Shown: positions 13,601 to 15,916 of the stretch, one piece after another | How the letters are laid out: each line of letters opens with the position of its first letter | Position numbering within the stretch: the first letter of the stretch is position 1 | From: Mytilus trossulus | Taxonomy: Eukaryota | Reading direction: 5' to 3' | Assembly (NCBI RefSeq): GCF_036588685.1 | Contig: NC_086385.1 | Location: 50,305,216 to 50,369,215, forward strand | DNA: 64,000 nucleotides | Position numbers and translations under genes: made by a program | The notes under the pieces: generated by a model | What the model saw: only the letters and a program-made list of their open reading frames with translations | The model's database searches: none | Told to the model about the DNA's origin: nothing

Positions 13601-14251
13601 GATAAAATCATCATTTACACCGTGATAAAAATGTTGTACGCCTAATGCGCGTTTCTTCTTTTAAAGACTCATCAGTTACGCTCGAATCAAAAATGTTAAA
13701 AAGGTCAAATGAAGTAGGAACTGAAGATTTACATTCTGTACAATAATATAAACTTTCTTCTGAAATCTTCGTGAACTAGACTGGTAGTTTGTGATCGAAT
13801 GTGTAATTATATACCAAAGGAAAAAATTTTGTAAGCTCTGAGTATTATGTCTTTCAGACCAAAACTATCGGTATATTTAAAAGGTTAAGAAGTAGTTTCA
13901 TAATAAAATAAGTTTTTTATCTAGATATACTCGTTGTGTTTTGATGTTTGATAAAAAATTAACGATCAAACTTCATCTAAAGGATATATTGTCCTTGTGT
14001 TACTCTGCAATACGAAGCTTAACGTATAGATGCACTTGTACTTAGGGGTAGTATGTTACATGTTAGCCAAAACCCTATAAAACACTGTTTATCTTTAAGA
14101 AAGCTATCCCAGTAACGCATATGCATTTTCATATTACTCAAACGGAATTTCTTCAAGAAATTTTATACCAGTATGAGTACTAAACTGTATAAACTATATC
14201 AGAAAATGTGAGTCTGTTTTATTAACTTTTCATTTTCTTTGATCTTTCCAG

Positions 14252-15455
14252 GCTTGACAGTGTCCTCGGGAGCTTCGCCACATATGCAAGGTTAAAAGGT
14301 CGTTACGATGACGACTGGATCGATAGGTTAAATCATTTATACACGACTATAATTTTCATCATTTTTACCATTGTTGTTAGTACGAAGCAGTATGTTGGCG
14401 AGCCAATCCACTGCTGGTGTCCGGCTGAATTCAAGGAGTCTATGGTTGACTACACTAACAATGTATGTTGGATATCCAATACATACTACGTCCATATTGA
14501 CAAGGATATTCCGAAGTACAATCACGCGAGATATGAAAGCGAGATTACATACTACCAGTGGGTTCCGATGATCTTGTTGTTTCAAGCCTTGTTATTTAAG
14601 GTCCCCTGTATTATGTGGAGAATTTTAACAGCATCAGCCGGAGTCAATTTGGATAAAATAGTCACACTTGCAGCGGAAACACAGTATATTTCTCCAGATG
14701 ATAGAGAACGAACTATAAAACACATAGTACGTTACATGGACAGATGGTTGGAAAATGCTCGTGAATATAGATCCGGATGTTTTATACGCTTGCGTCAAAC
14801 TATTTCAAAATACTGTTGTATAGTATGTGGAAAACGTTATGGAAATTATCTGGTCACCATATATATGTTTATAAAGTTACTATACATGTCGAATGCTATT
14901 GGACAGTTATTCATTTTGAATGAATTTCTAGGGACAAATTACAACGCATATGGACTTGAAGTATTAAGCCATCTGGCCAGTGGCGAGGAGTGGGACGAAT
15001 CAGCAAGGTTCCCAAGGGTGACACTATGTGATTTTAAAATTCGTAAACTTGCTACACTCCAACAGTACACAGTACAATGTGTACTACCTATAAATCTTTT
15101 TAATGAGAAGATTTTCATATTTATCTGGTTCTGGCTTGTTTTTGTGTCTGTTTTAAGTTCGGCGAATTTCTTAGTATGGTGTTATACTATGATTTTTAGA
15201 CAACACCGAATTCGTTATTTGAAAAAATTTCTCAGGATTAATGAATGTTACAAATCAGAATTAGACAAGAAAATGGCCGTCAAATTCGCTGAGCAGTATT
15301 TGCGACAAGATGGTATTTTTGTTTTGAGACTTGTAGGTAAAAACGCTAATGATGTTTTAGTGTCAGAGATAGTGTTGCATCTATGGAACCATTATAGAAA
15401 CAAACCATTATTTAAACATGCTAATCAGGTCAGCGATGACAATAGTAATGTCTGA
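14252..15455 (+). CDS. inx: Innexin (invertebrate gap-junction protein, unc-9/unc-7-like family), main coding exon, ~401 aa; first codon completed by an upstream exon
   Basis: ORF extends upstream of the 14442 ATG to acceptor ttttctttgatctttccag|G at 14251/14252: LDSVLGSFATYARLKGRYDDDWIDRLNHLYTT...KQYVGEPIHCWCP...YYQWVP...FPRVTLCDF...QCVLPINLFNEKIF...YLRQDG. These are hallmark innexin motifs with 4 TM segments and paired extracellular Cys. In-frame TAA at 14223 and no intervening ATG, so splicing is required. Confidence 0.97.
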
Positions 15456-15617
15456 CTAACCGCACAAAAACTACTGAAACTTGTTAAAATCCAGTATTAT
15501 GCATTTGATGATGGAGAAGGTACACAAGGTCAGAGAGTTTCCGATATTTTACTATCAGATGATCTCAACCTTCCGAATGGTGATATCAGCCAATCATCTT
15601 TCGAAACAGAGGTTTAA
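15456..15617 (+). other. Candidate in-frame C-terminal extension of innexin (53 codons) past a UGA-CUA stop, ending ETEV*
   Basis: TGA 15453-15455, then CTA ACC GCA ... GAA ACA GAG GTT TAA (15615-15617) = LTAQKLLKLVKIQYYAFDDGEGTQGQRVSDILLSDDLNLPNGDISQSSFETEV. Confidence 0.7.
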
Positions 15618-15753: not shown

Positions 15754-15916
15754 TAAGAGGGTCTGGAAGGGGATTAGAGAATACAGATTAAAAAAAATAC
15801 TTGAATATAAAGAACAGAAAATAATTGATAAAATAGACCAAGCAAATAGAATAATGACTTAAAAATTAAAGATAAGATTAATAAAGACCTTCCATCCCCT
15901 CTATCCAGATCCTTAA
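15754..15916. mobile_element. Small MITE in the probable innexin 3' UTR
   Basis: Inverted termini taagagggtctgga / tccagatcctta; A-rich AAGAATA-type interior; related copy at 34176-34417. Confidence 0.6.

What the first reader, a model, noticed from the sequence alone, without database searches (positions are those of the whole stretch)
15453..15617. Innexin stop is UGA-CUA followed by a 53-codon open extension: candidate programmed stop-codon readthrough in a gap-junction gene
Seen: ...AAT GTC TGA CTA ACC GCA... stays open in frame to TAA at 15615-15617, giving x-LTAQKLLKLVKIQYYAFDDGEGTQGQRVSDILLSDDLNLPNGDISQSSFETEV*. The segment looks more coding-like than the AT-rich DNA after it. Established: UGA-CUA is a canonical leaky context (alphavirus nsP3/nsP4 readthrough; UGA-CUAG in mammalian AQP4, LDHB, MDH1, OPRL1). 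Inference: at ~30% GC roughly 8% of random codons are stops, so 53 open codons arise by chance about 1% of the time (rough estimate). Adding the leaky context and a terminal PDZ ligand makes a functional +54 aa isoform likely. Sub-stoichiometric extended subunits in oligomeric innexin channels could control anchoring, much as the AQP4 readthrough isoform controls localisation. I cannot check whether this has been described for molluscan innexins.
Basis: partly seen in the sequence, partly recalled or inferred. Interest (0 to 1): 0.92.

Follow-up and report, generated by a model that had tools for sequence, protein, structure and literature searches.

The report
Conserved stop-codon readthrough tail on innexin
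A mussel gap-junction (innexin) gene ends in a leaky UGA-CUA stop followed by a 53-codon in-frame tail, and the same tail is kept as protein-coding sequence in oysters and clams, so a longer channel subunit with a different docking motif is very probably made by ribosomes reading through the stop.

Summary
The innexin exon (14252-15452, identical to Mytilus trossulus innexin unc-9-like) ends NSNV-TGA (15453-15455). CTA ACC follows, then 53 open codons to TAA 15615-15617, ending ETEV.

Openness alone is weak evidence: 2.9% of stop-to-stop intervals in this window are that long, and 1 of 19 paralogues has a longer junk frame.

Conservation is decisive. A venerid-like clam contig (L030) has the same TGA CTA ACC, 49 open codons and SETEV-stop. 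Oyster, a second clam and an unidentified mollusc-like sequence, seen through database ORF calls that read TGA as W, carry 48-72-residue tails. All share L1, K5, Q13, an NG pair (PNG in four of five) and a terminal E-T-x-V.

- Similarity exists only in frame 0 (scores 68-82 against 19±4 for shuffles).
- Indels are whole codons.
- 10 of 17 identical residues use different codons.
- pN is 0.43 while pS is saturated.
- Similarity stops at the second stop.

No SECIS, no stable RNA structure and no conserved splice donor were found, and every RefSeq isoform examined ends NSNV.

It is a new member of a known kind.

The parts
14252..15452 (+). Main coding exon of the innexin (unc-9-like). It follows the AG acceptor at 14250-14251. 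Codons start at 14253 and give 400 residues, from LDSVLGSF to DDNSNV.
   Evidence: translation; Pfam Innexin, E 4e-104; 400/400 identical to M. trossulus XP_063410968/9. The alternative 5' coding exons are not in the window.
15441..15452 (+). Codons for N-S-N-V, the canonical C-terminus. It fits the class I PDZ-ligand pattern S-x-V and is near-invariant in orthologues of bivalves, gastropods, octopus and chiton; one Mya paralogue (P0012) ends NDTIV.
   Evidence: every named RefSeq/GenBank orthologue examined except P0012 ends DDNSNV. The motif class comes from general knowledge, not from a test.
15453..15455 (+). The first, leaky stop codon, TGA.
   Evidence: TGA sits at the same place in clam contig L030. 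Oyster, clam B and the unknown relative carry W here in table-4-type ORF calls. The W equals TGA where DNA is available: L030 against P0379.
15456..15461 (+). CTA ACC, the six bases after the stop (readthrough context UGA-CUA).
   Evidence: Identical six bases in the window and in L030. Their role as a stimulator is inferred from the known UGA-CUA(G) motif.
15456..15614 (+). Readthrough extension of 53 codons. It has a conserved start (L1, T/A2, K5, Q13), a variable acidic/polar middle, then P-N-G at 15573-15581.
   Evidence: frame-specific similarity to clam and oyster tails (0 of 5000 shuffles reach it), whole-codon indels, pN 0.43 against pS 0.85, and no Pfam family.
15603..15614 (+). Codons for E-T-E-V, the new C-terminus. 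It fits the class I PDZ-ligand pattern (E-[ST]-x-V).
   Evidence: The terminal E-T-x-V is kept in all five sequences. Between mussel and clam, three of these four codons differ only synonymously.
15615..15617 (+). Second stop codon, TAA; end of the extended isoform.
   Evidence: The alignment with the clam ends exactly here (clam: TAG). Nucleotide similarity after it is at shuffle level, and stops become frequent in this frame.

Best explanation
This is a programmed stop-codon readthrough site in a strongly conserved molluscan innexin. Most ribosomes terminate at UGA 15453-15455 and make the canonical subunit ending ...DDNSNV. A minority decode the UGA with a near-cognate tRNA (Trp, Arg or Cys by analogy with other systems), helped by the CUA-ACC that follows. 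They add 1+53 residues and stop at UAA 15615. The extended subunit buries the S-x-V end and exposes a different, conserved E-T-x-V end. Gap-junction hemichannels are oligomers, so a few per cent of readthrough would put an extended subunit in many channels and could change which scaffold they dock to.

Shown here: the sequence anatomy; conservation of the TGA-CTA-ACC context in two bivalve orders; protein-type conservation of the extension in at least four lineages; and absence of SECIS, of stable RNA structure and of a conserved splice route.

Inferred: that ribosomes really read through, which amino acid is inserted, the efficiency, and the PDZ-switch function.
For: 1. Context. TGA CTA ACC is identical in the Mytilus window and in the venerid-like clam contig L030, which was found by an unbiased tblastn scan.
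2. Open frame. It is kept at 53, 48, 49, 49 and 72 codons in mussel, oyster, clam A, clam B and an unidentified relative, with no internal TGA (no further W).
3. Alignment. It runs from the first codon after the stop to the last codon before the second stop. BLOSUM62 local scores are 68 (mussel-clam) and 82 (mussel-oyster) against 19.3±3.7 for shuffles, 0 of 5000. Oyster-clam scores 40, reached by 1 of 5000. The other eight frame combinations score 14-25.
4. Indels are whole codons.
5. Between mussel and clam, 17 of 49 residues are identical and 10 of those use different codons. pN is 0.43 against a saturated pS of 0.85, and the core has pN 0.105.
6. After the second stop there is no nucleotide similarity (score 14 against 13.9±1.6), and stops are frequent.
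7. L1, K5, Q13, an NG pair about 12 residues before the end (PNG in four of five) and the terminal E-T-x-V are conserved.
8. The W in database ORFs is a table-4 reading of TGA. P0379 is identical to the L030 translation, and L030's DNA has TGA.
9. Oyster contigs that carry the spliced 5' exon (P0131 and P0002, whose N-terminus matches RefSeq X2) still have the stop and extension contiguous.
10. Every named RefSeq/GenBank isoform fetched, from 11 bivalve genera, ends at the canonical stop; none has a spliced alternative tail.
11. Rfam finds no SECIS at E<=10 in 3.7 kb (window) or 3 kb (L030) after the stop.
Against: - A minor spliced or edited mRNA is therefore not excluded in Mytilus.
- Only two species give DNA.
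- The three protein-only extensions are ascertained through ORF callers that can read only TGA as sense. 'TGA in 5 of 5' is therefore biased, and species with TAA or TAG would be invisible.
- Nothing is known for gastropods, cephalopods or chitons, although their canonical end is the same.
- Between the two clams the core is 265/265 identical but the extension only 40/49. Constraint on the tail is much weaker than on the channel, and its recent rate cannot be compared with neutral without DNA.
- No stimulatory RNA structure follows the stop (z -1.0 and 0.0), so efficiency would rest on the short context alone.
Confidence: 0.7

Rival explanations
1. A small in-frame 'exitron' removes the stop. 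In Mytilus this would be the 66-nt GT(15429)...AG(15494) interval with a CTGACTAAC branch-like site. The conserved tail would then be joined by splicing, not readthrough.
For: The window has CAG|GTCAGC at 15429 and ...TCCAG|TAT at 15494, in frame, with a branch-point-like CTAAC between them.
Against: The donor is not conserved. Oysters have Met (ATG) and the clam has CAA ATC at that place. The only GT shared by mussel and clam is the Val codon of NSNV. It has a poor donor (GTCTGA / GTTTGA), would make 45-48-nt introns, and sits 9 nt from the branch-like site. Residues inside the putative intron (L1, T/A2, K5, Q13) are conserved as amino acids in five sequences. All RefSeq isoforms examined end NSNV. 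5'-spliced oyster transcript contigs keep the stop and tail contiguous.
Confidence: 0.08
2. A-to-I RNA editing turns UGA into UGG (Trp) in part of the mRNAs, and the tail is then translated normally.
For: Molluscs have ADARs, and stop-loss editing exists in cephalopods (general knowledge). Database ORFs from transcript-type oyster contigs show W at the stop, which cannot by itself be told apart from a table-4 call.
Against: The A of UGA has a 5' G neighbour, the context ADARs disfavour most (general knowledge). The region around the stop has no stable duplex in either species (z +0.43 and +0.36 for 61 nt; -1.0 and 0.0 for 108 nt). Where DNA is available, the W call stands on a genomic TGA, and the same W artefact occurs in an unrelated paralogue with a random tail (P0028).
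Confidence: 0.04
3. The stretch is conserved for a reason other than extension of the innexin: a nucleotide-level 3'UTR element, or an independently initiated downstream ORF.
For: The first six bases after the stop are identical at nucleotide level. 3'UTR elements can be old.
Against: Conservation is at amino-acid level, not nucleotide level: 10 of 17 identical residues use different codons, pS is saturated and pN is 0.43. Only frame 0 aligns. There is no conserved AUG: none in the Mytilus tail, and Met at non-homologous places in clam and oyster. Conservation begins at the very first codon after the stop.
Confidence: 0.06
4. Chance: an ordinary 3'UTR that happens to be open in the innexin's frame.
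For: 2.9% of stop-to-stop intervals in the window are 53 codons or longer. One paralogue (L006) has 86 open junk codons after its stop.
Against: The same frame is open in all five orthologue sequences, ends at the homologous E-T-x-V, and shows highly significant frame-specific similarity.
Confidence: 0.02
5. The UGA encodes selenocysteine.
For: A conserved in-frame UGA followed by conserved coding sequence is also the signature of selenoproteins.
Against: No SECIS-like match at E<=10 in the 3.7 kb after the stop in the window or the 3 kb in L030. The canonical product ending at this UGA is conserved and annotated in every species. No redox motif surrounds the site.
Confidence: 0.01

Closest known systems
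Mammalian AQP4 / AQP4ex (UGA-CUAG readthrough of a channel subunit)
   Same: An oligomeric membrane-channel subunit whose canonical end is an S-x-V PDZ-type ligand (SSV in AQP4). It is followed directly by UGA CUA and a short conserved in-frame tail. The extended minor isoform co-assembles with the canonical one and governs anchoring (PMC6444679).
   Different: An unrelated protein family and phylum. The seventh base is A here, not the G of the CUAG motif. The tail is 53 rather than 29 residues. Here the tail itself ends in a strong class I ligand (E-T-x-V). Nothing has been tested experimentally here.
UGA-CUA(G) readthrough genes of vertebrates (MDH1, LDHB, OPRL1, OPRK1) and alphavirus nsP3/nsP4 UGA-C
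   Same: Same stop codon and same three following bases. Function is gained through a short linear motif at the new C-terminus (PTS1 in MDH1 and LDHB; class I PDZ patterns noted in OPRL1 and OPRK1 extensions; PMC4999894).
   Different: Those were validated by reporters, Ribo-seq or MS. This case rests on comparative sequence evidence only.
PhyloCSF-type conserved readthrough extensions in Drosophila and Anopheles
   Same: Detected by the same logic: a conserved stop, usually TGA-C, followed by a region with protein-coding evolutionary signatures up to the next stop. Extensions are disordered and rich in linear motifs, and often sit in neuronal genes (PMC4999894; the rest from general knowledge).
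   Different: A different phylum (Mollusca). No paper in the searchable library links innexins or molluscan genes with readthrough. The divergence spanned here (Pteriomorphia to Heterodonta) is deeper than within the fly or mosquito sets.

Membership tests
Innexin (PF00876) gap-junction subunit | Full-length match to the Innexin profile above the curated cut-off | tested here: met
   348.8 bits against a cut-off of 25, profile positions 1-333 of 333; 400/400 identical to M. trossulus innexin unc-9-like.
Programmed stop-codon readthrough (UGA-CUA type) | Leaky stop context: UGA followed by C, ideally CUA(G) | tested here: met
   TGA CTA ACC in the window and in clam L030. The seventh base is A, not G.
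Programmed stop-codon readthrough (UGA-CUA type) | The stop codon itself is conserved rather than replaced by a sense codon in relatives | tested here: met
   All named orthologues end at this position. DNA shows TGA in 2 of 2 species. The three W-calls imply TGA but are ascertainment-biased.
Programmed stop-codon readthrough (UGA-CUA type) | The region between the first and second stop evolves like protein-coding sequence in the same frame (open frame, whole-codon indels, synonymous bias, signal ends at the second stop) | tested here: met
   (details in the For line). Based on 5 peptide sequences and 2 DNA sequences; no formal PhyloCSF.
Programmed stop-codon readthrough (UGA-CUA type) | Other routes to the tail are excluded (splicing, RNA editing, selenocysteine) | tested here: inconclusive
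   No conserved donor, no SECIS, no duplex, and no spliced isoform among the RefSeq models examined. RNA reads could not be examined.
Programmed stop-codon readthrough (UGA-CUA type) | Extended protein or ribosome footprints observed; reporter readthrough above background | not testable with these tools
   Needs Ribo-seq, mass spectrometry or a dual-luciferase assay.
Class I PDZ-binding C-terminus | C-terminal x-[S/T]-x-[V/I/L] with a free carboxylate, conserved | tested here: met
   ETEV, ETEV, ETEV, ETEV and ETAV at the end of all five extensions, and NSNV at the canonical end. This is a pattern match only.
Class I PDZ-binding C-terminus | Demonstrated binding to a PDZ domain | not tested
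   No partner was identified, and complex prediction was not used because no specific partner is claimed.

The most novel reading that the evidence does not exclude
An ancient programmed readthrough, dating at least to the common ancestor of pteriomorph and heterodont bivalves (roughly half a billion years by general knowledge), works as a PDZ-ligand switch on a gap-junction channel. Sub-stoichiometric extended subunits replace the S-x-V end with an E-T-x-V end. That would set which scaffold anchors innexin channels, for example at electrical synapses. It would be the first recoding event described for any gap-junction protein and for any molluscan nuclear gene.
Probability: 0.35. Interest if true: 0.85.

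Novelty: new member of a known kind. Interest (0 to 1): 0.7.

Why it matters
Functional stop-codon readthrough in animals is documented mainly in flies, mosquitoes and mammals. A case kept across bivalve orders would be among the oldest known, and to my knowledge the first in Lophotrochozoa and in the innexin/pannexin superfamily.

It offers a concrete, testable way of tuning the scaffolding of gap-junction channels without a second gene or splice form, parallel to AQP4ex. It also means that current annotations of this gene in all bivalve genomes miss an isoform.

There is a practical by-product. ORF callers that switch to genetic code 4 on low-GC animal contigs leave 'W-readthrough' proteins in large protein collections. 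These can be mined systematically for conserved post-TGA extensions.

Tried and rejected
- The search of protein representatives with an extension alignment (collected) was wasted. The profile took all 451 columns of the one full-length row and returned only innexin-domain hits. None of the 150 listed hits reached the extension columns.
- A region search with the oyster tail found only its own cluster.
- Scans of genome contigs and viral contigs found no orthologue. The metagenome scan gave one orthologue, L030.
- The idea that the start of the tail is an amphipathic helix is not supported: the hydrophobic moment is no higher than for shuffles.
- No stimulatory RNA structure after the stop.
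- No Pfam family in the tail.
- The alternative 5' coding exons known from RefSeq isoforms are not in the window.
- The paralogue L002/L003 also has TGA-CTAG plus a 29-codon tail ending ASTV. A table-4 ORF call of that orthogroup from another species (P0028) has an unrelated 20-residue tail, so that one is not shown to be conserved.

Full report
**What is in the window**

Positions 14252-15452 (+) are one long coding exon. It follows an AG acceptor at 14250-14251 and encodes 400 residues, from LDSVLGSF... to ...DDNSNV.

It is a full-length innexin (Pfam PF00876, 348.8 bits). It is 400/400 identical to Mytilus trossulus 'innexin unc-9-like' isoforms X1 and X2, so the window comes from a Mytilus genome. 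Those isoforms differ only in short alternative 5' exons, which are not in the window.

The reading frame ends AAT GTC TGA (15453-15455). CTA ACC follows, then an open frame of 53 codons to TAA at 15615-15617.

**Is an open frame of that length unusual?**

Only mildly.
- Composition gives P = 1.4%.
- Among 8346 stop-to-stop intervals in this window, 2.9% are 53 codons or longer.
- Among 19 further innexin paralogues of the same genome, post-stop frames run 0-28 codons, except one of 86 codons that is plainly AT-rich junk.

The case therefore had to be decided by comparison with other species.

**The canonical end is ancient**

The orthogroup is extremely conserved: 83-92% identity between mussel, oysters, scallops, clams, abalone and whelk, and 78-82% to octopus- and chiton-type sequences. 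Every named protein examined ends ...[SN]DDNSNV, apart from one Mya paralogue (P0012) that ends NDTIV. The stop is therefore at a fixed, old position. It is not a recent nonsense mutation or an assembly error.

**The extension is conserved too**

1. An unbiased tblastn-confirmed scan of metagenome contigs returned one orthologue with DNA, L030. Its core is 98.5% identical to Mercenaria, so it is a venerid-like heterodont clam. Its DNA reads ...AAC GTT TGA CTA ACC GTA..., stays open for 49 codons and ends ...SETEV TAG.
2. Large protein collections hold ORF calls that read this TGA as W.
   - Oyster-type sequences are P0125, P0126, P0128, P0124, P0131 and P0002. They stand on hundreds of contigs and have a 48-residue tail ending FETEV.
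   - P0379 and P0382 are identical to the L030 translation. This shows that W stands on a genomic TGA.
   - A second clam is P0383, with a 49-residue tail that is 40/49 identical to L030.
   - An unidentified relative is P0394, with a 72-residue tail ending AETAV.

   The same caller artefact on an unrelated paralogue (P0028) gives a random tail. The artefact itself therefore does not create similarity.
3. The five tails align end to end. They share L1, T/A2, K5 and Q13, then a variable middle with whole-codon indels, an N-G pair (P-N-G in four of five) about 12 residues before the end, and a terminal E-T-x-V.

**Statistics**

| Comparison | BLOSUM62 local score | Shuffles reaching it |
|---|---|---|
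| Mussel-clam | 68 | 0 of 5000 |
| Mussel-oyster | 82 | 0 of 5000 |
| Oyster-clam | 40 | 1 of 5000 |

Shuffles score 19±4. Of the nine frame combinations between mussel and clam DNA, only frame 0 against frame 0 scores; the others give 14-25.

Of 49 aligned codons, 17 encode the same residue, and 10 of these use different codons. For example, ETEV is GAA ACA GAG GTT in the mussel and GAA ACG GAA GTG in the clam. Nei-Gojobori counts give pN 0.43 against pS 0.85 (saturated) in the tail, and pN 0.105 against pS 0.92 in the adjacent core.

After the second stop, nucleotide similarity is at shuffle level (14 against 13.9±1.6) and stops are frequent in that frame.

This is the pattern of a translated region under purifying selection, weaker than on the channel core. 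Between the two clams the core is 265/265 identical and the tail 40/49.

**How is the tail reached?**

*Readthrough.* It fits every observation. The stop is TGA, the leakiest stop. It is followed by C and by CUA, the context of alphavirus and mammalian UGA-CUA(G) readthrough (general knowledge). AQP4 has ...TAT GAC TAG... with an SSV end (PMC6444679). The six bases after the stop are identical in mussel and clam, and amino-acid conservation starts at the very first codon after the stop.

- Its donor CAG|GT is specific to Mytilus. Oysters have ATG there and the clam has CAA ATC.
- The only GT shared by mussel and clam is the Val codon of NSNV. Using it would give a 45-48-nt intron with a poor donor, 9 nt from the branch-like CTAAC.
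- Residues inside the putative intron are conserved as amino acids.
- RefSeq isoform sets of 11 bivalve genera vary only at the N-terminus; every isoform fetched ends at the canonical stop.
- Oyster contigs that already carry the spliced 5' exon (P0131, P0002) keep the stop and tail contiguous.

*Editing (UGA to UGG).* This is disfavoured by the 5' G neighbour (general knowledge) and by the lack of any stable duplex.

*Selenocysteine.* This is disfavoured by the absence of any SECIS-like hit at E<=10 in either species.

*An independent downstream ORF.* There is no conserved start codon.

**What it probably does**

They differ at the positions that set PDZ specificity, and E-[ST]-x-V resembles the ends of Shaker-type and NMDA-type channel subunits (general knowledge).

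Readthrough would bury the first ligand and expose the second on a minority of subunits of an oligomeric channel. This is a plausible way to change anchoring, as in AQP4ex. It is inference only: no partner was identified or tested. The middle of the tail is variable and acidic/polar, as is usual for readthrough extensions (PMC4999894). The idea of an amphipathic helix at its start was tested and not supported.

**Limits**
- DNA is available for two species only.
- The three protein-only tails could be seen only because their stop is TGA.
- The state in gastropods, cephalopods and chitons is unknown.
- The lineage of P0394 is unknown; its 78-residue core is closest to Solemya at 91%.
- No expression, Ribo-seq or MS evidence is available.

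**Novelty**

The searchable literature holds no paper that links innexins, gap junctions or molluscan genes with stop-codon readthrough. The mechanism is a known kind; the gene family, the phylum and the depth of conservation are new.

**Verdict**
- Observation: confirmed.
- Confidence that this is a selected readthrough extension: 0.7.
- Interest: 0.7.

Noticed in passing
L002:~2680-2780 (G000:C13:57821475-57822659 +) and L003 (G000:C23:2753971-2755155 -): The closest paralogue (52% identity, canonical end ...EGEDV) also stops at TGA followed by CTAG, the full UGA-CUAG motif. It has 29 open codons ending A-S-T-V. A table-4 ORF call of this orthogroup from another species (P0028) has an unrelated 20-residue tail, so conservation is not shown. 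The two loci give identical scores and tails, so they are a duplicate or a haplotig.
   Followed up: partly
G000:C13:26.70-27.04 Mb (L004, L005, L007, L008, L010, L012, L013, L015) and C13:62.58-62.75 Mb (L014, L016, L017, L023/L024): There are two tandem arrays of single-exon innexin paralogues on the same chromosome-scale contig as the window. L015 has an in-frame TAG, and L021/L022 (C13:50.13 Mb, about 180 kb from the window) each have an in-frame TGA. These are pseudogenes, introns or further recoding candidates.
   Followed up: no
proteins P0125, P0002, P0379, P0383, P0394, P0028: ORF callers behind the Logan, ENA and JGI protein sets sometimes apply genetic code 4 to low-GC mollusc contigs, reading TGA as W. 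This was verified on L030 (DNA TGA) against P0379 (W). It creates artificial 'readthrough' proteins in the collection, which can be exploited to survey post-TGA frames.
   Followed up: yes
L006 (G000:C5:58667811-58668956 +), after its TAA stop: There is an 86-codon open frame after the stop of an innexin paralogue. It is hydrophobic, AT-rich and looks like junk. It was a useful reminder that long post-stop frames arise by chance in this 31% GC genome.
   Followed up: partly
window 15787-15885: Three poly(A)-signal-like hexamers (ATTAAA at 15787 and 15865, AATAAA at 15880) lie 170-265 nt after the second stop. If they are used, the 3'UTR beyond the extension would be short. This was not checked with reads.
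   Followed up: no
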